Part shown: positions 1,298 through 63,045 of the stretch, one piece after another
Layout: every line of letters begins with the position of its first letter
Numbering within the stretch: position 1 is the stretch's first letter
IMG/VR virus record: IMGVR_UViG_3300022698_000267
Coordinates: 124,001 to 188,000 of that record
Reading direction: 5' to 3' (one strand)
Length of the DNA: 64,000 nt
Position numbers and translations under genes: made by a program
The notes under the pieces: model-generated
Seen by the model: the letters and a program-made list of their open reading frames with translations, nothing else
Databases searched by the model: none
Told to the model about the DNA's origin: nothing

Positions 1298-2293
1298 TTG
1301 ATGGGAAAGAGTAGGTTAAAACCCAAGGTTAAGAAAGAAATTGCAGTTGTTCCACATTCTCGTGTGGATCCTAAGAAGGGAGTTGAAGAAGTTGAAGGAC
1401 ATCAACGTAGTATGGATGTTAATGCTGCTGTTTCTGATGTACATAAATCGAAGGAAAATGCAGCAAATCCTGATAGACAAAGACGAGAGTTTGTGGATGA
1501 TATGAATCAGAAGTTTTCTGAGATGAATAGTAGGGAAGAAACACATGATGACTTTAGAAAAAAGACTGGACAAAGAGAACAAGCAAAGCGTCTTACCAGT
1601 GAAGAAATAGGAACTATTGATAAGTACACAGAGGAAGTTGGATTCAATGAAAAGTTGCGAAAGTCTATCAAGGATGGACATACCAATGATCCAGACGTAA
1701 AGCTTCTGGATTCTGTGGTTTCTAAAGCAGAACCACTAGCAAATGATACGTTAGTAGTTAGAGGATCCAGAAGAGATTTTCATAAAACCATTGGTAGAGA
1801 GTTGAAAGTTGGTGAAGTCATCACAGACCATGGATTTATGTCTACCACTACACAACCGGATGTAGCTTCTAATTTCATGTGGAAGCAGAATAAAGATACC
1901 GGAAAGATCAAGATGGGAACCTTCTATCAAATAAGTTTGCCGAAAGGAACGAAAGCATTTCCTATAAATGCTAAGGAGCATGAATATCTTCTTTCCAGAA
2001 ACATGAACTTTGAAGTACTAAATAATCAAGTAGTTGATATGAACAAAGATTCCCAGAAGTTACCAAGGATACTAAAACAGTATGGAGAGCAAGGATTTAA
2101 TCCCCTCACTTGGGGAGTTGGGAGTGATGCCGATACTGGTGGTGGTTCTGCTGGCGGCTCGACCGGTTTGGAATCAGAAAAGTTACGACTGATTCATTTA
2201 CGAGCTTTGCCAAATGAAAACCAGAGAGGAAAAGTTAGTGACAAACCTTTACAACCTAAGAAGACTGTTATTCGGAGAAAGAAAAGGAAATAA
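1298..2293 (+). CDS. ADP-ribosyltransferase (VIP2/exoenzyme-like R-S-E fold) with basic low-complexity N-terminus
   Basis: LVVRG ... DHGFMSTT ... ISLPKGT ... EHEYLL match the R, STT and ExE motifs. Confidence 0.8.
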   Translation: MMGKSRLKPKVKKEIAVVPHSRVDPKKGVEEVEGHQRSMDVNAAVSDVHKSKENAANPDRQRREFVDDMNQKFSEMNSREETHDDFRKKTGQREQAKRLTSEEIGTIDKYTEEVGFNEKLRKSIKDGHTNDPDVKLLDSVVSKAEPLANDTLVVRGSRRDFHKTIGRELKVGEVITDHGFMSTTTQPDVASNFMWKQNKDTGKIKMGTFYQISLPKGTKAFPINAKEHEYLLSRNMNFEVLNNQVVDMNKDSQKLPRILKQYGEQGFNPLTWGVGSDADTGGGSAGGSTGLESEKLRLIHLRALPNENQRGKVSDKPLQPKKTVIRRKKRK

Positions 2294-3866: not shown

Positions 3867-3944
3867 TGCGTCTGTAGCTGAGAGGTTCAGCGGTGGACTC
3901 TAAATCCACGTCAACGTAGGTTCGAATCCTACCAGACGCACCCA
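3867..3944 (+). tRNA. amber suppressor tRNA, anticodon CTA
   Basis: Acceptor GCGTCTG/CAGACGC, D stem GCTG/CAGC, anticodon stem GTGGA/TCCAC with loop CT-CTA-AA, T arm GTAGG-TTCGAAT-CCTAC. Confidence 0.9.
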
Positions 3945-3964: not shown

Positions 3965-3993
3965 TTGACAAAACCCCTCAAATATACTATAAT
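3965..3993 (+). promoter_or_regulatory. sigma70-type promoter (copy 3)
   Basis: TTGACA-17-TATAAT directly after the tRNA. Confidence 0.85.
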
Positions 3994-5618: not shown

Positions 5619-5693
5619 AGGGGTGTTGCCAAGTGGTAAGGCAGCGGGCCTTGGACCCGCTATTCGGAGGTTCGAATCCTTCCACCCCTGCCA
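5619..5693 (+). tRNA. tRNA-Gln(TTG), C at position 33
   Basis: Acceptor AGGGGTG/CACCCCT, anticodon stem GCGGG/CCCGC, loop CC-TTG-GA, CCA. Confidence 0.9.
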
Positions 5694-5703
5694 AATTAAA
5701 TTA

Positions 5704-5837
5704 TGATGGGTGCCCTAATGGAGGGTTGATGTTCGGAGAGTTTGAGGCCGGTAACCTTTGAGCTTTTCAAACATCGGGAACAATTACCGGTTGTGAAATG
5801 ATAATTTGTAGGTTCGAATCCTACCATCCATCAGCCA
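5704..5837 (+). ncRNA. tRNA-like RNA with anticodon arm replaced by an approximately 80-nt insert
   Basis: TGATGGGTG/CATCCATCA stem + G + CCA, D arm CCCT-AATGG-AGGG, T arm GTAGG-TTCGAAT-CCTAC. Confidence 0.7.
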
Positions 5838-5865
5838 CAATTTAAAGGGAGTACTTGAGTAGGAA

Positions 5866-6219
5866 ATGTTAAGTCCTCAGATAAAAGAATATATGCGATT
5901 GATTGGTTTACAATCTTTTCCATTCAATTCTGAGCAGTTGAATAAAGCATGGAGGTTTGCTGCTAGTCAATGTCATCCAGATAAACCTGGTGGAAGTTTG
6001 CAGAAGATGCAACGTGTGAATGAAGCTCGTGCTGCATTGAAACCTCTCGTCACCATTGTAGTAGAAAAGCCAGTAGAAAAGGTTACTAAACAAAGAACAA
6101 ACGAGCCAGGGACGAATAATTTTTTGCGACAAATGAGGAAACAAACCATTAAAGGTTTGAAGAAGAAAAAGGCGCAAGGAGCAGATACCGACGATTTATT
6201 GAAGTTTTGGCAAGAGTAA
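5866..6219 (+). CDS. DnaJ (J-domain) protein
   Basis: KAWR..ASQCHPDKPGGS...MQRVNEA with the HPD motif. Confidence 0.85.
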   Translation: MLSPQIKEYMRLIGLQSFPFNSEQLNKAWRFAASQCHPDKPGGSLQKMQRVNEARAALKPLVTIVVEKPVEKVTKQRTNEPGTNNFLRQMRKQTIKGLKKKKAQGADTDDLLKFWQE

Positions 6220-7069: not shown

Positions 7070-7364
7070 GCCTGGGTGGCGGAACTTTGGTAGACGCAAG
7101 GGACTTGATTTAAATTGAGCCTTTATAGGGAAACTTATAAAGTGGACACTGCTAAAACGGGGAAACCTTAACAGATATGCTGATGGCAATCCCGTGCTAA
7201 CCGAAAGGTGAGTGTAGAGACTTTATACAGTGCATCTAAGTCTAAGGATAAGATGAAGAGAAAGTCCAGACCACAAACTATTTTTATAGGCGATGAAAAT
7301 CGTAGTGGTATGAAAATCCCTCGATCGCAAGGTCGTGCGGGTTCGATTCCCGCCCTAGGCACCA
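7070..7364 (+). tRNA. tRNA-Leu(TAA) interrupted by a group I intron
   Basis: Exons 7070-7106 and 7313-7364 join to loop CT-TAA-AA; CCA. Confidence 0.9.
7107..7312 (+). mobile_element. group I intron (tRNA-Leu UAA, IC3-like), no homing endonuclease ORF
   Basis: P AAAACGGGGAAACC, Q AATCCCGTGCT, R GTGTAGAGACT, S AAGAGAAAGTCC, terminal G before AAAATCCC. Confidence 0.9.
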
Positions 7365-8520: not shown

Positions 8521-8549
8521 TTGACATTTTTATTCATTTCCTATATAAT
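8521..8549 (+). promoter_or_regulatory. sigma70-type promoter (copy 5)
   Basis: TTGACA-17-TATAAT, then TTTAAGTGGTTGGGGAAA leader. Confidence 0.85.
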
Positions 8550-34135: not shown

Positions 34136-37100
34136 GTGATGTCACTTGATGTTAATATTCGTCTTCAGGATAAGCTTGAGAGATCTACCATTTTTAATCA
34201 CAGTCTTAGAGCTTTTCTATTATCACTCCTAATTGTGCTAGGGTTGTACAATCTGAATCTATTTCATCTAACGGGATCACTTATTCCTGTAATAATATCA
34301 ATGTCTTTGTTTCTACTGACTTGGAACACTCGTAATTTCATCAATAATCCTTACATTACTTTTATGGGGATGTCTTGTTTTTTCATAGGTTTGTTTTCAC
34401 TTGGTCATATTGTATTCTATCATGGTGCAAATCTTATAGTACCTATCGACGCTACCAGGTTGGTACGAGTAACAGGATTATTTGCAGATATAATACAAGG
34501 ATTTTCTTTTTTACTAGCACCATTATTCTTTGTTGCTAGAGTGAAATTTAGAATTCTATTTATTATAATTTCTGTTTTTCTACTATCAATGTTGTACTTT
34601 TCTATTTCGATTGATCCAGTATTCAAGTATTACATTGTTTTTAATTTTACCAGTATACAGATATTTATGGTACAGGCAGTACTATTAATTTGTGCTTTAT
34701 TCTTGACATTTAGAATAAGAGAGGCATTTGATAAAAAAACCTTCTACTATCTTCTAGCTTCCATGGTATGTTGTTTAATTTCTGGAATCTCCTATGTGTT
34801 AAATGACCCATTTACAACATATCATGCTATAATTACAATCGTCTTTAATATTCTGACTCTTTTATTTTTATATGACGCTATTATCACTACTGTTTTACTA
34901 AATCCTTATTCCAGTTTAGCTCAGAGTCTAATTACAAGTAAGAAATTGATAAATAATTTAGATTCTATGTATACTAATCTATTTGAAAATATAAATGCTG
35001 GTGTAGCTATATTTAGACCAGAACATGGTAATTTCACTTTGATTTCTATTAATAGAACGGCTTTGGAACTAGATGATCTTGATATTAGGGAGGTATTGGG
35101 TCGTAAAGTAACGGAAATTTGGCCTTCTGTAAAAGAATATGGTATATACGAAGCATTTGAGCACGTTCGAGATACTGGAGATTCTGTGGAATGGCCCACT
35201 TCTTTATATGAGGATGAGAGAATAAGGGCATGGAGAGAAAGTTTTATATATCAACTAGAATCTGGTTTACTAGTGTCGGTATATACAGATAGAACAGATG
35301 AGAAAGAACAGGAAGAGAAATTATTAGAAAGTGAGAGAAGATATAGAACAGTAGCCGAATTTACATACGATTTGGAATATTGGGTTGCTCCTGATGGTTC
35401 ATTTCTTTATATATCTCCGGCATGTGAGAGAATAACGGGGTATACGGTCGAAGAGTTCATGAATGATCCTGAATTAATGGATTCTATAATTTATCCGGAG
35501 GATAGGTTTAAATCTTGTTCTATGAACTCTAAAGATGATGGAACTCTTAATGTAAATTCCACAGAGTTTCGAATAAAGACTAAAAATCATCTGACTAAAT
35601 GGATAGGACATATTTGCATGAACATCTACGATGAAGATGGCACCTATCTGGGAATTCGAGGTAGTTCCAGAGATATTACAGGTAAAAAGGAAGCTGAATT
35701 GGAGGTACTAAGAAGTAAAGCTCTTTTTGAAACCCTTTTTGATGCTCTTTCCATACCTATCTTTCGTAAAGATTTGGAAGGTCATTACGTAATGTTCAAT
35801 AAGGCTTTTTGTAATTTCTTCGAAAGAGATAAGGAGGAATTACAAGGTATTTCAGTCTATGATTTACATACTAAAGAAGTTGCTGATATTTGTATGAATA
35901 GAGATAAAGCTTTGCTGCTATCTGGAGATTCTATACAATCATATACTATTGGAGTGAGGACTAAAAACGGTCTTAGGCAGGTCATTATTAGAAAGTCACT
36001 TTTGAAGGATCATGATGATGTTATAATTGGCTTTGTAGGAGGTGTTTTCGATATTACTAAATTAAATCAATTACAGAATCAATTAATGTCTGAGAAATTA
36101 CTTCATGAAGAAGCACAGAGAGTGGCTAAATTGGGTCATTGGGAATTTGTTAATGGTGATAAGTTTCCTAATTGGTCTGATCAGGTTTTCGAAATATTTG
36201 GGGTATCCAAGACTGCAAAAGGGTTATCTATTGAAGATTGGAAGACCATAATAGACCCTAGAGACTACGATATGGTCATAGATGCTTTTAATACGTGTAG
36301 ATTAGAAAATAGGTCCTTTGAAATAGAATTCAGGGCCATTAAATTTGATACTAAAGAACCAAGATGGTTGTATACTATTGGACGTTGTGTAGAAGATACC
36401 GAACCTAAAAGGGTTTATGGAATCGTTCAGGATATTACAGATTACAAGGAAGCACAGATCTCCTTACATTCTACAGAATTTAAATTCAAAACGTTGATAG
36501 ATAATCTGAATGTTGGGATATACAGTTGTACTGTTGGAGAAAAAGACACAAAGTTTATTGAGGTTAATGATGCTTTAGTTAGACTATTGGGTGCTAAGAA
36601 TAAACAACAATTGTATAAGTTACGACCTAAAGACTTCTGGCTAAATCCTGAAAAACGTGATCTACTTTCGTTTAGACTTTTAAAATATGGTAAAATCCGC
36701 AATATGGAGCTACAATTAAGGACTCTAGATGGTTCTAAAATTACAGGTTTAGTATCTGGTGTTGTTGTCCACGATGATGAATCTAAACCCATTCGCACTG
36801 ATATGATACTGGAAGATATTACACAGAGAAGAAACCTGGAGATACAGTTACAACACGCTGTTAAAATGGAGGCAGTTGGTAGATTTGCTAGTAAATTGTC
36901 GCATGACTTTAATAATCTATTGAGTATTCTACAGGGCTATTCAGAGATACTAAAGAAGGAGTTACCGGAGGGTCAAAATCGTCAGAGAGCAGAGTTAATA
37001 CATAAGTCTTCCATCAATGCTCAGAAGTTAATATCCAGGCTTCTAAAGTTTAGTCGTAAAGAGGTCCTGGAGGTTCATAATGTCAACATACAGAAGTTCT

Positions 37101-38011
37101 TAGATGTGTTCTATACATCAGTCAAAGGATTCCTATCTGAAAATATACAACTAAAATTTATATCAGAAATTGAAAATACTTATTGTAATATGGACATAGC
37201 CCAGATGGAGCAGGTATTAATGAATATAATCGTTAATGCTAAAGACGCTATGCCAGATGGAGGTTCGTTACTTATAGAATGCATTTCTATCAATGTTGAT
37301 GATGAATTCACCTCTTCGAAACCCCATCTTAATTCTGGAGGTTACGTTTGTATTAAAATTGGAGACACTGGTCATGGAATGTCTGATGAAACAAGATTAA
37401 ATATCTTCGAACCATTCTTTACTACTAAAGCTAAAGGAACGGGATTAGGTTTATCCACAGCCTATGGAATAATAAAACAACATGGTGGTGATATATGGGT
37501 CTACAGTGAATTAGGGAAGGGCACAACCTTCAAGATTTATCTACCCATTGTTTCTAAAGACTCCTATGCACCTAAAGTAGATGAAAAGATTCAAATACTG
37601 GATACGAGTTTACATGGAGATGAGAATTTGATAATTGTAGAAGACGATCGTGCCCTGCTTACAATGTTCACAGATATATTGAGTTCTTCTGGATACTATA
37701 CTATGCCGTTCACTGATGGAGATCAATGTCTTGAAGCTATGGTCTTGACGGACGTTATTCCTGATCTGGTCGTTAGCGATTATGTTATGCCAGGAGGGTA
37801 TAATGGACAGCAATTATGTGAAGAGTTGTTGGAGTTATATCCTGATATTAGAATAATACTAATGTCTGGATATTCAGAGAAGTTAAATGGAAGTACTAGG
37901 GTTTCAGGGAAGATCAAAGCTTATCTGGAGAAACCCTTTTCGAATAGAGAATTGTTACAGCTTGTTAGAACTCTTTTAGATGAAAGAAGGAGGTCAATAG
38001 ATGAGAAGTAA
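34136..38011 (+). CDS. hybrid sensor histidine kinase: membrane (MASE3-like) region, several PAS domains, HisKA, HATPase, REC
   Basis: About 8 TM segments; YISPACERITGY; SHDFNNLL H-box; NIIVNAKDAM, DTGHGM, FFTTK.KGTGLGL; VEDD..SDYVMP..KPF. Confidence 0.92.
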   Translation: MMSLDVNIRLQDKLERSTIFNHSLRAFLLSLLIVLGLYNLNLFHLTGSLIPVIISMSLFLLTWNTRNFINNPYITFMGMSCFFIGLFSLGHIVFYHGANLIVPIDATRLVRVTGLFADIIQGFSFLLAPLFFVARVKFRILFIIISVFLLSMLYFSISIDPVFKYYIVFNFTSIQIFMVQAVLLICALFLTFRIREAFDKKTFYYLLASMVCCLISGISYVLNDPFTTYHAIITIVFNILTLLFLYDAIITTVLLNPYSSLAQSLITSKKLINNLDSMYTNLFENINAGVAIFRPEHGNFTLISINRTALELDDLDIREVLGRKVTEIWPSVKEYGIYEAFEHVRDTGDSVEWPTSLYEDERIRAWRESFIYQLESGLLVSVYTDRTDEKEQEEKLLESERRYRTVAEFTYDLEYWVAPDGSFLYISPACERITGYTVEEFMNDPELMDSIIYPEDRFKSCSMNSKDDGTLNVNSTEFRIKTKNHLTKWIGHICMNIYDEDGTYLGIRGSSRDITGKKEAELEVLRSKALFETLFDALSIPIFRKDLEGHYVMFNKAFCNFFERDKEELQGISVYDLHTKEVADICMNRDKALLLSGDSIQSYTIGVRTKNGLRQVIIRKSLLKDHDDVIIGFVGGVFDITKLNQLQNQLMSEKLLHEEAQRVAKLGHWEFVNGDKFPNWSDQVFEIFGVSKTAKGLSIEDWKTIIDPRDYDMVIDAFNTCRLENRSFEIEFRAIKFDTKEPRWLYTIGRCVEDTEPKRVYGIVQDITDYKEAQISLHSTEFKFKTLIDNLNVGIYSCTVGEKDTKFIEVNDALVRLLGAKNKQQLYKLRPKDFWLNPEKRDLLSFRLLKYGKIRNMELQLRTLDGSKITGLVSGVVVHDDESKPIRTDMILEDITQRRNLEIQLQHAVKMEAVGRFASKLSHDFNNLLSILQGYSEILKKELPEGQNRQRAELIHKSSINAQKLISRLLKFSRKEVLEVHNVNIQKFLDVFYTSVKGFLSENIQLKFISEIENTYCNMDIAQMEQVLMNIIVNAKDAMPDGGSLLIECISINVDDEFTSSKPHLNSGGYVCIKIGDTGHGMSDETRLNIFEPFFTTKAKGTGLGLSTAYGIIKQHGGDIWVYSELGKGTTFKIYLPIVSKDSYAPKVDEKIQILDTSLHGDENLIIVEDDRALLTMFTDILSSSGYYTMPFTDGDQCLEAMVLTDVIPDLVVSDYVMPGGYNGQQLCEELLELYPDIRIILMSGYSEKLNGSTRVSGKIKAYLEKPFSNRELLQLVRTLLDERRRSIDEK

Positions 38012-44171: not shown

Positions 44172-46622
44172 CTAAATAACATTTACATCACAAACTTCTC
44201 CATTGACGTTATCCTTATCATTCATATTCACAATTTTTGTACCAATAGAATATCTATTACGTATTGGTATATCTGAAATTTTCATCGACATTGTTGCATT
44301 TCCAGAAGTTAAGATTGTTACCCTGGAATCCTCTGTTACACACACGGCTCCTGCTATTTCTTTTTCTGGTTCATCCACTTTTAATAATGATAAACCAACT
44401 GACCCTCTGTTGGCAATTTTGAATTGCTCAATTTTTACTCTTCTTCCAAATCCATTTCTGGATACAGAAAATATTGAATGTTCATCGTCGTATACGACTT
44501 TTCCCATACTTATGATTTCATCACTGCCTTTCAAATTCATCCCTAAGAATCCCATAGCAGATCTGGTGGTTTTTATCTCTTTTATTTTCCCACAATTTAG
44601 GATTAAAACCATTGAATTTCTACTAACAAACATTATGTAGTCAGAGTCTGTAACTTCTTCCACTCCTAATAATTTATCATTATCCCTTAATGTTATAGCT
44701 TCAAGTCCTTGAACTACTTTTTTGCCTCGAAATAATGACATTGGAGATTTCTTTATGTAGCCATTTTTTGTTGCAAAGAAAAGATTTGTATCTTTTGCCT
44801 CTTCTGGTTTATAATGGGTTATGGAAGTTACGAATTCGGAATTTGTTTCAAATGGGTTTTTTCCAACTTTTTGTATATCGATTAAACCAGATATATGTTT
44901 TCCTTTAGCAGATCTACTCATTAGTGGAATATCTTCAACATTTAATATGAAGTATTTTCCAGTATTTGTAAATAGAAGTAGTTCATCATTTGAATCCACA
45001 GATATCATTGTTTTAATTAGATCTGAACCATGAACTATCCCTTTTCCACCCCTTTTTTGTGTTGGATACTCTGAAGCATTGGTGGTTTTAATATACCCTC
45101 TAGATGTTAGGGTAATTATTAATTTGGCAGAATCTAGTAATATTTTTTCTTTTTGGTCTTCAACTTCCTCTTCATTTAGGATTTTGGTTCTTCTTGGTCT
45201 TCCGTACTCATTCTTTATTTCCAACATTTCATCATTTATGGTTTTATCTAATTGCTCTTCCTCATCAATAATAGAATTAAGTTCCTTAACTCTTTTTGTA
45301 GCATTTTCATGCTCTTCTTTTATCTTCTTGTTTTCTATTTTTGTGAGTCTTTGTAAGGAAAGTCCTAAGATGGCTTTTGTTTGTTTCTCACTGGTTTTAA
45401 ATTTCTTTTGTATCTTTTGTTTTGCTATTTCAGAATCATCTGATTTTCTAACAATAGCAATAATTTCGTCAATATTTTTTGCTGCAATCTGCAAACCTTC
45501 TAATATATGCATTCTTTGCTGCAATTTTCTGGCTTCAAAGGCAGATCTCCTAAGAATTATATCTCTTCTGTGATCTATAAATGCTTCTATATAGTCTTTC
45601 AAATTTATTTGCTTTGGTTTATTGTCACTAACACATAGCATGTTAATGCTAAATGATGCTTCCAATGGAGTGTGTTTGTACAAACCATCTACGATGACTT
45701 TTTCCTGACTATTTCTCTTTAAACTAAGAACAATCCTGATTCCATTTCTATCCGATTCATCCCTAATCTCAGAAATTTCGGAAATACCCTTCTCAGTTAC
45801 ATAATGTCCTATTTTTTCAATCAAAGTAGTTTTATTAACAGAATATGGAATTTCCTTTATAACAATAGACTTGGTTCCATCTGGATTTGTTTCTATGTTA
45901 ACAACTCCATTGATTTTTATACTTCCACGTCCAGTTTTATATGTTTCTGAGATGGAGTCATTTACAAAAATAACTCCTCCAGTTGGAAAGTCAGGACCCT
46001 TGACAATTTTGCATAAATCTTCTATTGTTATTGCAGGATTTTTAATAGTAGCTATTATTGCATCTACTAATTCATTCAGGTTATGTGGTGGAATACTGGT
46101 GGCCATCCCTACTGCTATTCCAGAGGTTCCATTTAAAAGGAGATTAGGTATTCTGGTCGGAAGTATTTCTGGTTCTACAGTGCTACTATCGTAATTTTCT
46201 CTATAATCTACGGTTTCTTCGTTGAGATCCTTTGTAAATTCATCTGCTATTTTTTGTAATCTGCATTCAGTATATCTCATTGCTGCAGGTTTATCACCAT
46301 CTACAGACCCTATATTTCCTTGACCATCAACCAAGGCACTTTGCATGTTGAAATCTTGTGCCATTCGTATCAGGGCATCATATATGGCTCCGTCACTATG
46401 TGGATGGTATTTACCTATAACATCACCAACTATTCTAGCGGATTTTTTAAAAGGCTTGTCGTATCTATTGCCCAATTCTGTCATTGCATAGATAATTCTT
46501 CTGTGTACTGGTTTTAACCCATCTCTAATACTTGGAATAGTCCTTCCTACAATTACATTCATCGAGTAGTTCAGATACGATTTTTCAATTTCTTCTTTTA
46601 TGTCGACGTCGGTACTAGGCAT
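44172..46622 (-). CDS. gyrA: DNA gyrase subunit A
   Basis: [25 protein letters not shown] catalytic Tyr, GyrA box QKRGGKG, C-terminal repeats. Confidence 0.95.
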
Positions 46623-52229: not shown

Positions 52230-52340
52230 TGTGGGTATAGCTTAAAGGTAAAGCGCCTGATCTAGTGAAAGAATGTAATGGTTGGTCACCTTGCCCTTTC
52301 TCGGTCAGGAGAAAATGTTCGAATCATTTGCCCACAACCA
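52230..52340 (+). ncRNA. tRNA-like RNA with a 44-nt extension in place of the anticodon loop
   Basis: TGTGGGT/GCCCACA + A + CCA, D arm GCTT/AAGC, CCTGA/TCAGG stem, T arm AAATG-TTCGAAT-CATTT. Confidence 0.75.
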
Positions 52341-55320: not shown

Positions 55321-57681
55321 ATGGAAGAGCGATACGACGGAAATAACATAATTGTTTTAGAGGGTCTAGAAGCTGTCAAAAAGCGTCCAGCTATGTATAT
55401 TGGCAGTACAGACTATCGTGGTGTTCATCATCTGGTTTATGAGGTTCTAGATAATAGTATTGATGAAACTATGGTTGGTTATTGTGATCATATAAAAGTT
55501 CTAATTCACAAAGACAACAGTATTACTGTAATAGATAATGGTCGAGGAATTCCGGTAGATAAACATCCTACTGAAAATATGTCATCTTTAGAAGTTGTTA
55601 TGACAAAATTGCATGCAGGTGGAAAATTTGATCACAGAAGTTATAAAGTTTCTGGTGGACTTCATGGAGTTGGAATTTCTGTAGTTAATGCACTTTCTGA
55701 ACAATTAAAGGTTAGTGTTAGAAGGGATGGAAATTTATTTATACAGAATTATGAAAAAGGATTTCCTGTCACCGAATTAAAAAAAGGAAAAAAGACCAAT
55801 AAAAGAGGAACTACCATAAAATTTCGACCAGATGAAGACATTTTTGGTTCGTACAAAATAGATTTTAATATGCTATCCGAGAGGATGAAGGAACTAGCTT
55901 ATTTAAATGGTGGTTTACAGTTAGAACTTTTTGATGAACGTACTGGTGCAGAATCTTCTTTTAAATTCGATGGTGGAGTTAATAGTCTACTTAAAAAGTT
56001 GAATGAAGGCAAGAGAAATGTGCATCCAATCATTTATGATTCGGATTCAATGGATTCTGGTCTTTGGATAGAATTTTGTTTCCAATATACAGATGTTTCC
56101 AACACAAGAGTTCTATCTTTTTGCAATAACATTAAGACTCAAGAAGGTGGAACTCACCTCTCTGGTTTTAAAACTGCTTTAACAAGAACATTTAACTCTT
56201 TTATACAAGGTAGTGATTCCGTTGCAAAAAGATTGAAGCAATTTAGAATTAATGGAGAGGACATTCTAGCAGGTTTGTCTGCTATCATTAATGTCAAAGT
56301 GCCGGATCCACAATTTGAAGGACAAACCAAGACAAAGTTGGGAAATAATGATGTTTCTGGAGAGGTTAGATCTTTCGTTGGGGGTAAATTAACCACTTAT
56401 TTAAATGAGAACCCAAAACATGCAAAATCTATTGTAGAAAGATTAATTCAATCTACCAGAGAAAGAGAAGCAGCCAGAAAGGCTAAGGATATTATTAGAA
56501 AGAAATCAGGACTTTCACATCTTCTGATATCCAGTAAATTGGCTGATTGTCGTAGTAAAAATGTTAAAAAGCGAGAACTATTTATTGTTGAAGGTGATAG
56601 TGCTGGTGGTTCTGCTAAACAAGGTAGAAATCCAGAATTTCAGGCTATATTGCCATTAAGAGGTAAAGTTTTAAATATTGAAAAAGCAGATACACACAAG
56701 ATTATTAAAAACAAAGAGATTCAAAATTTAATTGCTAGTCTAGGTGTGGGTTTTGGTGATGACACTGATGTCAATAAACTTCGATATGACAAAGTCATTA
56801 TTATGACAGATGCTGATATTGATGGAGCTCATATTAGAACTTTGCTTCTAACTTTCTTTTTTAGGCAATTTGTTGAGATTATAGAGAATGGACATCTGTA
56901 TATATCACAACCACCTTTATATAGAGTCTATAAGAAAGGATTTGAAAAATTTCTTTCTGATGAGGCTGATTTAGAAGAATTTCTATTGGAGGATTCTATA
57001 GATTTTCTTGCTGTAACAAATGGAAAAAAGACTTATACAAAGAAAACTTTACAAAATTTCTTACTTCGAATTAGAGAACTTATGAGACTTTTTTCTAGAG
57101 CATCCGATTTTGGTATACCAAAAGAATTGTTTAAACTGATTCTACTATATGAAGACCTTTCAGTTAATTTAAATTCTAAATTTGAACCATTTAAGAAGTA
57201 TATGAAAAAGAATGGTTTTTTTCTAGAATTAAAATCGAATGTTATAGAAGATGAAGATCTACCTTACTTTCTATTACAATATGGAAGAAAGAAGGTTAAA
57301 ATTCCAATTGATTTCTTCAGATCCAATTTGTATAGGAATTCCTACAAGATTTTGAGTCGAATAAAACTTGATAGTCCGACATTACAATTTAAACTTCCTT
57401 CAATAGAAGAAGAATTAAGTTACGAAGAATTGTACGTCAAAAGTTTAAATCTTCTGCGTTCTAAGTATTCTATTCAACGTTATAAAGGTTTGGGGGAAAT
57501 GAATCCAGAACAGCTTTGGAAAACCACTATGAATGCAAGAACTAGAAATCTTCTACGAGTAACAATACCAGATGCAGAAGCAGCAGATAGATCTTTTAGT
57601 ATGTTAATGGGTGGTAATGTTGAAATCAGGAGGAATTTCATTGAGAGCTACTCCTCCAATTTTGAATTTCTAGATATTTAA
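55321..57681 (+). CDS. gyrB: DNA gyrase subunit B
   Basis: LEAVKKRPAMYIG, EVLDNSIDE, LHAGGKF, VEGDSAGGSAKQGR, MTDADIDG, RYKGLGEMN. Confidence 0.95.
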   Translation: MEERYDGNNIIVLEGLEAVKKRPAMYIGSTDYRGVHHLVYEVLDNSIDETMVGYCDHIKVLIHKDNSITVIDNGRGIPVDKHPTENMSSLEVVMTKLHAGGKFDHRSYKVSGGLHGVGISVVNALSEQLKVSVRRDGNLFIQNYEKGFPVTELKKGKKTNKRGTTIKFRPDEDIFGSYKIDFNMLSERMKELAYLNGGLQLELFDERTGAESSFKFDGGVNSLLKKLNEGKRNVHPIIYDSDSMDSGLWIEFCFQYTDVSNTRVLSFCNNIKTQEGGTHLSGFKTALTRTFNSFIQGSDSVAKRLKQFRINGEDILAGLSAIINVKVPDPQFEGQTKTKLGNNDVSGEVRSFVGGKLTTYLNENPKHAKSIVERLIQSTREREAARKAKDIIRKKSGLSHLLISSKLADCRSKNVKKRELFIVEGDSAGGSAKQGRNPEFQAILPLRGKVLNIEKADTHKIIKNKEIQNLIASLGVGFGDDTDVNKLRYDKVIIMTDADIDGAHIRTLLLTFFFRQFVEIIENGHLYISQPPLYRVYKKGFEKFLSDEADLEEFLLEDSIDFLAVTNGKKTYTKKTLQNFLLRIRELMRLFSRASDFGIPKELFKLILLYEDLSVNLNSKFEPFKKYMKKNGFFLELKSNVIEDEDLPYFLLQYGRKKVKIPIDFFRSNLYRNSYKILSRIKLDSPTLQFKLPSIEEELSYEELYVKSLNLLRSKYSIQRYKGLGEMNPEQLWKTTMNARTRNLLRVTIPDAEAADRSFSMLMGGNVEIRRNFIESYSSNFEFLDI

Positions 57682-62900: not shown

Positions 62901-63045
62901 GAACGTGTTTAATAATATTGCTGAAAACTTCCTAAATATACGAAATCCAGTCAATCAGGAATTTATGTGGCAAATGCATCAAAAATGTGGACAGGTTACA
63001 ATGCCACCAGATGCAAATACTCTTAGAAGTCAAGGAATATATTAG
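59965..63045 (+). CDS. large protein with C-terminal putative amidoligase (COOH-NH2 ligase type 2-like) domain
   Basis: MGVEIE, KEYITPVMSG, TSGLHVNIG, LMEYRSP; low-complexity middle. Confidence 0.7.
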   Translation: MSGFFGFFRGAASYGLGSESRLEGFIHGLNDFVESGSNPLPYANRIVTPTIDFASGPSGFITKISLGDARNSHLFRSAKLAAMNSNIPTMPMQDARLGEFSIVTNPEAYGGNLEAASIGHALNSYISVMGMQDPNLATFLTEGSLRNKTQFNPIQNFLASEFRWQDSSQSMQDRNLFYSNQFLGTMDVYGHPSGGEFQGQRAHPERWGDTNLLRRLNPGINDLINSISIDDSASGIKAGFEKQMLRVKHSADSQYENIHDFATPNTIISRSQLSGTDFDRPVQTDADVEGRPDVTPTDIINRSGEGIASVLASTTGTTLDVYNSETGELLHTQSPSGTTRPSTEAPTEGNVPSSGEAASGNIYVFADGYIPDPDFADEEEYIRNRYGDEAANAFTEGRYASSVEDAERMSRAGGPESSEGVRPSGNPEVRHTDTHSIDNTPPSLQDTPTQRTGRPGPFSESGGFNVNYEDFDSAARAQYDERNVNVVDSPSSIDTSAIRIISEAEYDALEKRYPIGGIGHQEEGSHLVSTPDAVHAVNTLRDIQKSFGLANDSDRRFYENIGKNAIGERNFSVHSGELDTVTNKIKRKMMLGGAIVGRSEEGGHLWLMDEPLNSLWEVGSSMSNRPQDFPRPNFRTIQDTPIPEMDPNPDNWRIRNMDISMRDAMGKGYIMPIGGRDAVFLPSFANPDFSMGVEIESFLTRPISEITRGIQQNYGYNLNHMAFNGEFSSHNDPSVYGGGKEYITPVMSGLRAFKAGYLLGEQLKSLGDVPPIHRGPDRFDTSGLHVNIGTIPAYNKKNAFKFSTDMLRLQEDVIKRMSEPDVRYNYYSRPSTGGQYSPYNSTIKPERLPPDARSSPHEEHGRQFWSQSISKFRSAGRTNEYDYYRNNGKHYSNVALEMSMSDVGKLAKYKTFGMHKLQLMGLMEYRSPMYVPGGDHVLASMAMGTKLAADIFQASQNHGAFARTNKLIPPIGGWFNGDKNVFNNIAENFLNIRNPVNQEFMWQMHQKCGQVTMPPDANTLRSQGIY

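What the first reader, a model, noticed from the sequence alone, without database searches (positions are those of the whole stretch)
5704..5837. CCA-ended tRNA mimic with a possible pseudoknot instead of an anticodon arm
Seen: a 9-bp acceptor-like stem TGATGGGTG/CATCCATCA, then G and CCA; a D arm with AATGG loop; a canonical T arm. The 80-nt middle has crossing helices TTGATGTT(5726-33)/AACATCGG(5770-77) and CCGGTAA(5748-54)/TTACCGG(5784-90), i.e. H-type pseudoknot geometry. Known: tmRNA, bacterial Y RNAs and allo-tRNAs have tRNA-like domains, but this RNA has no tag ORF and has a D stem. Inference: an undescribed tRNA-like RNA, possibly a decoy for anticodon nucleases or a ligand for synthetases, EF-Tu or RelA.
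Basis: partly seen in the sequence, partly recalled or inferred. Interest (0 to 1): 0.75.

Follow-up and report, generated by a model that had tools for sequence, protein, structure and literature searches.

The report
Long-armed tRNA-like gene in phage
A 134-base gene inside a giant phage's tRNA cluster keeps the acceptor end, D arm, T arm and CCA tail of a tRNA but has a 20-base-pair hairpin where the anticodon loop should be, so it is a real tRNA-derived RNA that either works as a non-decoding tRNA look-alike or needs a kind of splicing not known in bacteria.

Summary
The element at 5704-5837 is real. It lies 10 nt after tRNA-Gln in a 19-tRNA array of a 273.5-kb IMG/VR jumbo phage, and like its neighbours it ends in an encoded CCA. 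ARAGORN (also in intron mode) and all 4227 Rfam models fail to call it.

The proposed pseudoknot is not supported. Its second helix (7 bp) appears in 14% of shuffles. It competes with a nested 13-bp G-U-rich helix that, stacked on the first helix, gives a long arm (z = -3.7, strand-specific).

The 5' part reads as a canonical tRNA: U8, A14, G18G19 and the anticodon-stem halves UGAUG/CAUCG. Three things interrupt it: about 33 nt in the anticodon loop, about 26 extra nt before the T arm, and 2 extra nt (CA) after the T stem. Deleting both inserts in silico gives an ARAGORN-callable tRNA with anticodon UCA, CCA, CGA or CGG, depending on the junction.

No homologue and no sequencing run could be found, so covariation and expression are untested.

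- Best reading: a non-decoding tRNA-shaped stable RNA, comparable to T4 species 1 RNA (0.45).
- Rivals: a twice-interrupted tRNA that is spliced (0.25); a pseudogene (0.15).

The same genome holds other disrupted tRNA genes, including five circularly permuted units outside the window.

The parts
5704..5712 (+). Acceptor 5' strand (9 nt). Alternative reading: a 7-nt acceptor strand plus U8 and G9.
   Evidence: Pairs with 5825-5833 in the sequence and in the MFE fold.
5713..5725 (+). D arm: stem CCCU/AGGG, 5-nt loop AAUGG holding the G18-G19 equivalent.
5726..5777 (+). Long arm in the anticodon-arm position. It consists of H1 (5726-5733/5770-5777), a 1x1 mismatch (5734/5769), a 13-bp G-U-rich helix (5735-5747/5756-5768) and an 8-nt loop CCGGUAAC (5748-5755). 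It contains anticodon-stem halves UGAUG (5727-5731) and CAUCG (5772-5776), and two anticodon-loop-like heptamers, UUCGGAG (5732-5738) and UUUCAAA (5765-5771).
   Evidence: MFE fold. z = -3.7 on the + strand, 2 of 1000 shuffles as stable. Energy -19.5 against -11.1 kcal/mol for the reverse complement.
5778..5807 (+). 30-nt linker in the variable-region position, with no significant structure.
   Evidence: z = +0.24. H2 is within chance expectation.
5808..5824 (+). Canonical T arm: GUAGG-UUCGAAU-CCUAC.
   Evidence: The identical T arm occurs in three neighbouring tRNAs.
5825..5837 (+). Acceptor 3' strand CAUCCAUCA, discriminator G, encoded CCA.
   Evidence: All tRNAs of the array encode CCA.
5619..5693 (+). 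tRNA-Gln(UUG), 10 nt upstream, most likely on the same transcript.
   Evidence: ARAGORN and Rfam. No promoter-like or terminator-like site lies between it and the element.

Best explanation
It is a tRNA-derived gene whose product is a stable, non-decoding, tRNA-shaped RNA.

Inferred steps:
- It is made as part of the polycistronic tRNA/ORF transcript of the array.
- RNase P cuts at its 5' end, guided by the acceptor/T-arm helix and the GCCA.
- The 3' end is trimmed to the encoded CCA.
- The D loop (GG) and T loop (UUCGAAU) dock to form the tRNA elbow.

Shown by the sequence:
- Where the anticodon arm should be there is an irregular helix of about 20 bp, capped by an 8-nt loop that cannot present an anticodon.
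- A 30-nt unstructured linker follows.

The RNA would therefore meet the proteins that read the tRNA core (processing and modification enzymes, perhaps a synthetase or a host tRNA-directed nuclease) without taking part in decoding. This resembles the 139-nt species 1 RNA in the T4 tRNA cluster and the tRNA-like modules of bacterial Y RNAs. Its molecular target is unknown.
For: - Core intact: 9/9 acceptor pairs, 4/4 D pairs, 5/5 T pairs, a consensus T loop, GG in the D loop and GCCA. This holds despite three length changes relative to a tRNA, which argues for selection on the core.
- The long arm is significantly stable and strand-specific.
- It sits in line with 19 CCA-encoding tRNAs, 10 nt after tRNA-Gln.
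- Neither a tRNA model nor a tmRNA model accepts it. Removing the anticodon-loop insert alone does not make it callable.
- A 14-bp acceptor/T stack (9+5) and the absence of an acceptor-D linker fall outside the known decoding geometries: 12 bp for canonical and allo-tRNAs, 13 bp for tRNA-Sec (PMC7609411).
- Precedent: T4 rnaC folds as acceptor stem + long arm + hairpin + canonical T arm and lies in the T4 tRNA cluster.
- The same genome carries permuted tRNA-like units in which a long stem takes the place of the anticodon arm (unit B). These are shapes that cannot decode.
Against: - No expression data: no sequencing run was listed.
- No homologue anywhere searched, so no covariation.
- The three available copies are identical.
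- The 5' half is so canonical, and the split anticodon stem with U33/R37-compatible heptamers on both sides so tidy, that an interrupted but functional tRNA is a serious alternative.
- No function can be assigned.
Confidence: 0.45

Rival explanations
1. A twice-interrupted tRNA gene. A hairpin of about 33 nt in the anticodon loop and about 26 nt in the variable region would be removed by an unknown endonuclease, and the ends joined, for example by the phage RtcB ligase. The product would be a decoding tRNA. Its anticodon would be UCA (opal suppressor or Trp-type) if the junction lies at 31/32 as in the tRNA at 52230, CCA (Trp, which the phage set lacks), or CGG (Pro) if the junction lies at the classical 37/38 site.
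For: - Canonical 5' half (U8, A14, G18G19, U26) and anticodon-stem halves UGAUG/CAUCG.
- Deleting both inserts in silico gives ARAGORN-called tRNAs for every junction choice.
- G73 fits bacterial Trp and Gln identity (my knowledge of E. coli identity sets).
- The phage set lacks Gly, Val, Cys, His and Trp.
- Another tRNA in the window (52230-52340; Rfam tRNA 48.4 bits) has a 37-nt hairpin in the same place and is otherwise canonical.
- tRNA-Leu(UAA) at 7070-7364 carries a group I intron.
- The phage encodes RtcB.
Against: - Protein-dependent tRNA splicing is not known in bacteria or their viruses.
- No EndA-type endonuclease is present.
- There is no bulge-helix-bulge motif at the insert borders.
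- No nuclease lies beside RtcB.
- The insert is too short for any self-splicing intron, and no ribozyme family matched.
- Two separate excisions are needed, and 2 extra nt (CA) would still remain between the T stem and the acceptor.
- No sign of UGA recoding: only 3 in-frame TGA junctions between long ORFs.
Confidence: 0.25
2. A decaying tRNA pseudogene that picked up insertions and has no function.
For: - tRNA detectors reject it.
- No homologue is known.
- The closest relative found, with a 65%-identical neighbouring protein, has no tRNAs at that place. The array is therefore young and fluid.
- The cluster at 59.9-61.0 kb also holds degenerate tRNA pieces.
Against: - Every stem of the core is perfect and the T loop, GG and CCA are intact, despite three independent length changes.
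- The inserted sequence extends the anticodon stem as a significantly stable, strand-specific helix rather than as random sequence.
- The insert is not a repeat or mobile element elsewhere in the genome.
Confidence: 0.15
3. One reading: the middle forms an H-type pseudoknot (H1 crossing H2) that replaces the anticodon arm and gives the mimic its specific function.
For: Both helices exist and cross. H2 is 7 perfect Watson-Crick pairs with duplex energy -8.9 kcal/mol. Its 5' strand is the apical loop of the long hairpin, so a loop-to-tail pairing is topologically possible.
Against: - A helix like H2 appears in 14% of shuffles.
- The competing inner hairpin is worth -10.1 kcal/mol before any pseudoknot penalty.
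- With the full hairpin in place, the connecting loops would be 0, 1 and 6-8 nt across about 20 bp of stem. I judge this sterically implausible (inference).
- There is no covariation data.
Confidence: 0.1
4. A tRNA-like processing signal ('t-element'). Only the acceptor/T/D core is needed, to direct RNase P and 3' trimming and so release the downstream J-domain mRNA (ORF 5866-6219) from the polycistron.
For: ORFs and tRNAs alternate throughout the array. The element ends 28 nt before the ORF's ATG. The anticodon region appears free to vary while the core is kept. Plant mitochondrial t-elements are a precedent (PMC1920247, title and abstract only).
Against: A complete tRNA-Gln sits 10 nt upstream and would already provide the same cuts. 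This reading does not explain the stable long arm.
Confidence: 0.1

Closest known systems
Bacteriophage T4 species 1 RNA (rnaC, 139 nt; NC_000866 70908-71046)
   Same: A small stable RNA encoded inside a phage tRNA cluster, of similar length. It has a canonical T arm (CCGGG-UUCGAAU-CCCGG) next to an acceptor-like terminal stem, a long irregular arm in the middle and an extra hairpin before the T arm. Its function is unknown.
   Different: There is no detectable sequence similarity. T4 rnaC has no D arm, its terminal stem has two U-U mismatches, and it has no encoded CCA. It is not represented in Rfam, so membership cannot be scored.
Bacterial Y RNA-like RNAs (YrlA, Yrn1) with tRNA-like modules
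   Same: A tRNA core (T arm, D arm, acceptor-like stem) is joined to a long stem in the anticodon-arm position. M. smegmatis YrlA is cut by RNase P and receives CCA (PMC4201824).
   Different: The Rfam YrlA model gives no hit on the element. There is no GNCGAA(N)G Ro-binding motif (read from the sequence). The phage has no Ro/TROVE protein. The strand order is that of a tRNA, not the permuted order of YrlA.
Irregular tRNAs: tRNA-Sec (8/5, 9/4), allo-tRNAs (8/4, 9/3) and phage 8/4 tRNAs
   Same: A lengthened acceptor stem, a small D loop and a longer anticodon stem. Such tRNAs and irregular tRNA polycistrons occur in phages and metagenomes, and some are not used in translation (PMC5389517; PMC7609411).
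   Different: Those have 12 or 13 bp in the acceptor/T stack and a 7-nt anticodon loop. Here the stack is 9+5 = 14 bp, there is no linker, no anticodon loop, and the total length is 134 nt.
Intron-containing tRNA genes (archaeal/eukaryal bulge-helix-bulge introns; bacterial group I introns)
   Same: The insert sits in the anticodon loop and pairs so as to extend the anticodon stem. A group I intron interrupts tRNA-Leu(UAA) in the same array.
   Different: There is no BHB motif, no EndA, the insert is too short for group I, and a second insert and 2 extra nt would remain.
tmRNA
   Same: A T arm and an acceptor stem with CCA.
   Different: ARAGORN's tmRNA mode is negative. The Rfam tmRNA models match only the T arm: 15.5 bits against a gathering score of 84. 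There is no tag reading frame, and a D stem is present.

Membership tests
Canonical tRNA (Rfam RF00005 / ARAGORN) | Cloverleaf with a 7-bp acceptor, a 2-nt linker, a 5-bp anticodon stem with a 7-nt loop, and a 5-bp T stem abutting the acceptor. | tested here: not met
   No RF00005 match even at E <= 10. ARAGORN is negative with and without intron mode. The anticodon loop is replaced by a 36-nt insert, and there are 2 extra nt after the T stem.
Canonical tRNA (Rfam RF00005 / ARAGORN) | Conserved elbow nucleotides: T loop UUCRANY, G18-G19, U8, A14. | tested here: met
   UUCGAAU at 5813-5819, GG at 5720-5721. U at 5711 and A at 5717 fit U8 and A14 if the acceptor is read as 7 bp.
tRNA-Sec / allo-tRNA | An acceptor/T stack of 13 bp (8/5, 9/4) or 12 bp (8/4, 9/3), with a 7-nt anticodon loop and a long variable arm. 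| tested here: not met
   The stack is 9+5 = 14 bp. No RF01852 hit was listed for the element at E <= 10. The 30-nt linker has no significant helix.
tmRNA | A tRNA-like domain without a D stem, plus a tag reading frame and pseudoknots. | tested here: not met
   ARAGORN -m is negative. The Rfam tmRNA models match the T arm only, far below gathering.
YrlA / Y RNA-like | A match to RF02553, a Ro-binding stem with GNCGAA(N)G, and a neighbouring rsr gene. | tested here: not met
   No YrlA hit on 5704-5837. The motif is absent from the sequence. No TROVE domain is found in the genome.
BHB-intron tRNA (archaeal/eukaryal type) | A bulge-helix-bulge at the exon-intron borders, and a splicing endonuclease. 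| tested here: not met
   The motif scan finds none at the anticodon-stem borders. PF01974 is absent. A ligase (RtcB) is present.
Group I intron tRNA | A catalytic core of about 200 nt or more that matches RF00028. | tested here: not met
   The insert is about 33 nt and gives no RF00028 hit here. The positive control in the same array, 7097-7287, scores 59.7 bits.
T4 species 1 RNA-like stable RNA | A discrete stable RNA processed out of the phage tRNA transcript by RNase P, with a T arm plus a terminal stem. | not testable with these tools
   The architecture is similar. No family model exists, and no sequencing run was listed for this phage.

The most novel reading that the evidence does not exclude
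The element, the tRNA at 52230-52340 and the five permuted units at 59.9-61.0 kb of the genome are all precursors of working tRNAs. They would be matured by a protein-dependent cut-and-join pathway of the phage (an unidentified endonuclease plus RtcB). That would be non-group-I tRNA splicing and tRNA gene permutation in a bacterial virus, with this element yielding a Trp or opal-suppressor tRNA.
Probability: 0.15. Interest if true: 0.9.

Novelty: new variant of a known kind. Interest (0 to 1): 0.5.

Why it matters
Phage tRNA clusters have been known since T4 to hold tRNA-shaped stable RNAs whose function is still unknown. Standard annotation misses them.

This element has an unusually clean design: a perfect tRNA core, an encoded CCA and a long helix in place of the anticodon arm. 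It lies in a genome that also holds a hairpin-interrupted tRNA, a group I-interrupted tRNA, an amber-suppressor tRNA and five permuted tRNA-like units.

If it does not decode, it is a handle for asking what tRNA look-alikes do during infection: titrating tRNA-directed defence nucleases, serving as a processing signal, or being charged for a purpose outside the ribosome. If it is spliced, it would show a tRNA maturation route not known in bacteria or their viruses.

Tried and rejected
**Homologue searches (all empty)**
- Exact and gapped DNA patterns from the 3' end, the D arm and the middle were run in IMG/VR, in metagenome contigs and in genome contigs. Nothing was found except two chance hits in coding DNA (L013, L014).
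- blastn against GenBank phages returned only T-arm matches to ordinary tRNAs.
- Neighbouring proteins have no IMG/VR relatives.
- Their only database relative (65% identity) lies on contigs without tRNAs.
- A pattern from the adjacent tRNA-Gln was absent from IMG/VR.
- The one distant phage relative found (L003/G001, 41% identity in a 1026-aa protein) has no tRNAs and no match.
- That protein has no GenBank phage match.

**Strain variants**
- Two further JGI contigs of the same phage are identical over the element, so they give no information.

**Expression**
- Two searches for sequencing runs listed none.

**Other ideas tested**
- tmRNA, Y RNA, tRNA-Sec and ribozyme readings were rejected on Rfam and ARAGORN results.
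- The insert as a repeated mobile element was rejected: there is no second copy in the genome.
- Stop-codon recoding that would call for an opal suppressor found no support. An apparent TAG read-through at 63043 turned out to be two ordinary adjacent genes, also in the relative.
- I saw a short sequence resemblance between the linker (GGUUGUGAAAUGA) and the 5' flanks of the permuted units (GGUUGUUCAGAAU, GUUAUUACAGA). It is not significant by BLAST, and I do not rely on it.
- ARAGORN on re-permuted constructs of those units was too permissive to fix their anticodons.

Full report
**Context.** The window is bases 124,001-188,000 of a 273,563-bp IMG/VR virus record estimated 97% complete. It is a jumbo phage of about 37% G+C. 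It encodes gyrase A and B, a large hybrid histidine kinase and an ADP-ribosyltransferase-like protein. Between 3867 and 19033, all on the + strand, ARAGORN finds 19 tRNA genes interleaved with small ORFs. Printing them shows that every one carries an encoded CCA. Two perfect sigma-70 consensus promoters (TTGACA-17-TATAAT) lie in this stretch, at 3965 and 8521, which points to a bacterial host. The finding lies 10 nt after the CCA of tRNA-Gln(UUG) (5619-5693) and 28 nt before the ATG of a J-domain ORF (5866-6219).

**Check of the observation.**
- a 9-pair acceptor (5704-5712/5825-5833, one G-U), then G, then CCA;
- a D arm CCCU/AGGG with loop AAUGG;
- a T arm GUAGG-UUCGAAU-CCUAC, identical to the T arm of three neighbouring tRNAs;
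- H1 (8 pairs, two G-U) and H2 (7 Watson-Crick pairs), which cross.

The core cannot be a chance product. The element is nevertheless called by nothing: ARAGORN with tmRNA and intron modes, Rfam at gathering thresholds, and Rfam at E <= 10 on the 351-nt surroundings all fail. The last search returned only T-arm fragments of tmRNA models at 15.5 bits against a gathering score of 84.

**The pseudoknot.** The minimum-energy fold is -44.4 kcal/mol (z = -2.8 for the whole RNA). It keeps H1 and stacks a nested 13-pair helix on it across a 1x1 mismatch. That helix, 5735-5747/5756-5768, has six G-U pairs and is capped by the 8-nt loop CCGGUAAC. The arm 5726-5777 on its own has z = -3.7 (2 of 1000 dinucleotide shuffles are as stable). 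It folds at -19.5 kcal/mol, against -11.1 for its reverse complement. This is the signature of a structure selected at the RNA level on the + strand.

H2 pairs that apical loop with 5784-5790. As a duplex it is worth -8.9 kcal/mol, while the inner hairpin is worth -10.1 before any pseudoknot penalty. A perfect helix of at least 7 bp appears in 14% of shuffles of the middle. The best nested fold forced to contain H2 is 9 kcal/mol worse than the MFE. If both structures formed together, the connecting loops would be 0, 1 and 6-8 nt across about 20 bp of stem, which I judge implausible (inference). The linker 5778-5807 has no significant structure. The pseudoknot is therefore possible but unsupported. 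The supported feature is a long hairpin arm.

**Reading it as a tRNA.** From 5704 the sequence reads as follows:
- acceptor strand U1-G7, then U8 and G9;
- a D stem of 4 bp, with a loop holding A14 and G18-G19;
- U26;
- UGAUG, which finds its partner CAUCG 40 nt downstream.

Just inside these stem halves lie two heptamers, and each could serve as an anticodon loop: UUCGGAG and UUUCAAA. Both have U33 and a purine at position 37. Relative to a canonical tRNA the gene has three differences:
- about 33 extra nt in the anticodon loop;
- about 26 extra nt between the anticodon stem and the T stem;
- 2 extra nt (CA) between the T stem and the acceptor strand. These pair with U8-G9 and so produce the 9-bp acceptor with no linker.

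Deleting both inserts in silico makes ARAGORN call a tRNA for every junction choice. The anticodon is UCA (junction after position 31-33), CCA, CGA or CGG (junction at 36-38). Deleting only the anticodon-loop insert does not suffice. The phage set lacks Gly, Val, Cys, His and Trp. The discriminator G73 would suit Trp or Gln (my knowledge of E. coli identity rules).

**Other disrupted tRNA genes in the same genome.** Four other items bear on the interpretation.

- *The tRNA at 52230-52340.* Rfam scores it 48.4 bits as tRNA. It is canonical except for a 37-nt hairpin inserted directly after the 5' strand of the anticodon stem. ARAGORN in intron mode reads Glu(CUC). The insert again extends the anticodon stem (z = -2.5).
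- *tRNA-Leu(UAA), 7070-7364.* It carries a group I intron: RF00028 at 59.7 bits, above the gathering score of 50.
- *The amber-suppressor tRNA(CUA) at 3867-3944.* It can form an 8th acceptor pair, which displaces its CCA by one nucleotide.
- *Five tandem units outside the window, at 59.9-61.0 kb of the genome.* Each has the order T arm, acceptor 3' strand, discriminator, CCA, a 6-8-nt linker, the complementary acceptor 5' strand, UA, D arm. Each unit's outer flanks pair into a long stem of 10-20 bp. An anticodon-like hairpin lies after the D arm in units A and C, lies before the T arm in units D and E, and is replaced by the flank stem in unit B.

The YrlA model matches two of the permuted units end to end at 37 and 34 bits. 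That is below its gathering score of 69, and the model also gives sub-threshold hits on plain tandem tRNAs and in control genomes, so it is weak evidence. A published precedent exists. M. smegmatis YrlA has a 7-bp acceptor hairpin that RNase P cuts in vivo, after which CCA is added, giving a two-piece tRNA-like RNA (PMC4201824).

The phage encodes RtcB (250.9 bits), next to an HD-domain protein. It has no EndA-type splicing endonuclease, no TROVE/Ro protein and no CCA-adding enzyme. The search for a T4-type RNA ligase 1 also found nothing, but that family rang in no control genome, so its absence is not shown.

**Search for relatives and expression.** No homologue of the element was found by DNA patterns in IMG/VR, JGI metagenome contigs or GTDB genome contigs. 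blastn against GenBank phages and searches through neighbouring proteins also found none. Two chance hits were inspected and discarded. Two further contigs of the same phage are identical over the element. One is identical over 20.4 kb and the other has 4 mismatches in 5.6 kb, none in 5619-5865. A relative with a 65%-identical neighbouring protein has no tRNAs at that place, so the array is specific to this lineage. No public sequencing run was listed for this DNA. Covariation and expression are therefore untested, and every functional statement below is inference.

**Interpretation.** The perfect stems, T loop, GG and CCA are kept despite three separate length changes, and the stable arm is strand-specific. 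Both argue against a neutral pseudogene (0.15).

Two readings then remain: a spliced tRNA and a non-decoding tRNA-shaped RNA.
- The splicing reading (0.25) draws strength from the canonical 5' half, the tidy split anticodon stem, the parallel case at 52230 and the phage RtcB.
- It needs two excisions by an unknown nuclease. There is no bulge-helix-bulge at the borders. It leaves the 2-nt anomaly unexplained. And it has no precedent in bacteria or phages.
- The non-decoding reading (0.45) needs nothing unknown for maturation: RNase P, 3' trimming and the encoded CCA suffice.
- It fits the 14-bp acceptor/T stack, which lies outside the 12- and 13-bp geometries of translating tRNAs (PMC7609411).
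- It has precedents in T4 species 1 RNA, whose fold is acceptor stem + long arm + hairpin + canonical T arm within the tRNA cluster. Further precedents are the tRNA-like modules of Y RNAs and the irregular, non-translating tRNAs reported from phage and soil data (PMC5389517).
- It also matches unit B of the permuted set in the same genome, where a long stem likewise stands in for the anticodon arm.

What the RNA binds is unknown. A processing-signal role for the downstream mRNA is another, weakened by the complete tRNA-Gln 10 nt upstream.

**Verdict.** The element is a real, unannotated, tRNA-derived gene. The pseudoknot is not supported. It belongs to no curated family, and it stands closest in design to T4 species 1 RNA and to irregular phage tRNAs. 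I rate it a new variant of a known kind with moderate interest (0.5). Interest would be high if RNA data showed splicing. The permuted units outside the window deserve their own follow-up.

Noticed in passing
Outside the window: G000:C1:59,900-60,980 (L011:400-1480): Five tandem, circularly permuted tRNA-like units, each seemingly behind its own repeated upstream motif (AAATTTTGTTCTTT). Their order is T arm, 7-nt acceptor 3' strand, discriminator, CCA, 6-8-nt linker, perfectly complementary acceptor 5' strand, UA, D arm. The outer flanks pair into a long stem of 10-20 bp. An anticodon-like hairpin sits after the D arm (units A, C), before the T arm (units D, E), or is replaced by the flank stem (unit B). 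Two units match Rfam YrlA end to end at 37 and 34 bits, below the gathering score of 69. The phage has no Ro/TROVE gene. They could be two-piece tRNA-like Y-type RNAs opened by RNase P, as in M. smegmatis YrlA, or permuted tRNA genes. I found no report of either in this form for a phage.
   Followed up: partly
window 52230-52340 (+): A solitary tRNA gene (Rfam tRNA 48.4 bits) with a 37-nt hairpin inserted right after the 5' strand of the anticodon stem. ARAGORN intron mode reads Glu(CUC). A possible 8/4 acceptor/T layout places A73 before the CCA. There is no BHB motif at the borders.
   Followed up: partly
window 7070-7364 (+): tRNA-Leu(UAA) interrupted by a group I intron (RF00028, 59.7 bits, 7097-7287). 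Default ARAGORN and the gathering-threshold Rfam scan of the whole window both missed it.
   Followed up: partly
window 3867-3944 (+): An amber-suppressor tRNA (anticodon CUA; ARAGORN labels it Pyl from the anticodon alone). It has a possible 8th acceptor pair (U-1:A73), followed by C and CCA. The genome otherwise looks standard-code. One TAG between two long same-frame ORFs (63043) is an ordinary gene boundary, also in a relative.
   Followed up: partly
Outside the window: G000:C1:220472-221554 (L012:1420-2604): The phage encodes an RtcB RNA ligase (250.9 bits), preceded by an HD-domain protein. No splicing endonuclease or CCA-adding enzyme was found in the genome. The RNA ligase 1 search was uninformative because that family rang in no control genome.
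   Followed up: partly
L006:562-640 (Ralstonia phage RsoM2USA, MG752970.1, about 75,350-75,430, reverse strand): An unannotated element of about 79 nt in another jumbo phage's tRNA array. It has a 9-bp acceptor-like stem, no D arm, one hairpin with a 7-nt loop, a 17-nt single strand, and the same T arm GUAGG-UUCGAAU-CCUAC. Fold z = -3.25. ARAGORN and Rfam tRNA do not call it.
   Followed up: partly
window 3965-3993 and 8521-8549 (+): Two perfect 12/12 sigma-70 consensus promoters (TTGACA-17-TATAAT) inside the tRNA/ORF array. They suggest early transcription by the RNA polymerase of a bacterial host.
   Followed up: no
window 1298-2293, 34136-38011, 44172-46622, 55321-57681: Phage-borne genes: an ADP-ribosyltransferase-like ORF (PF03496), a 1291-aa hybrid sensor histidine kinase (MASE3, PAS domains, HisKA, HATPase, receiver), and gyrase A and B.
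   Followed up: no
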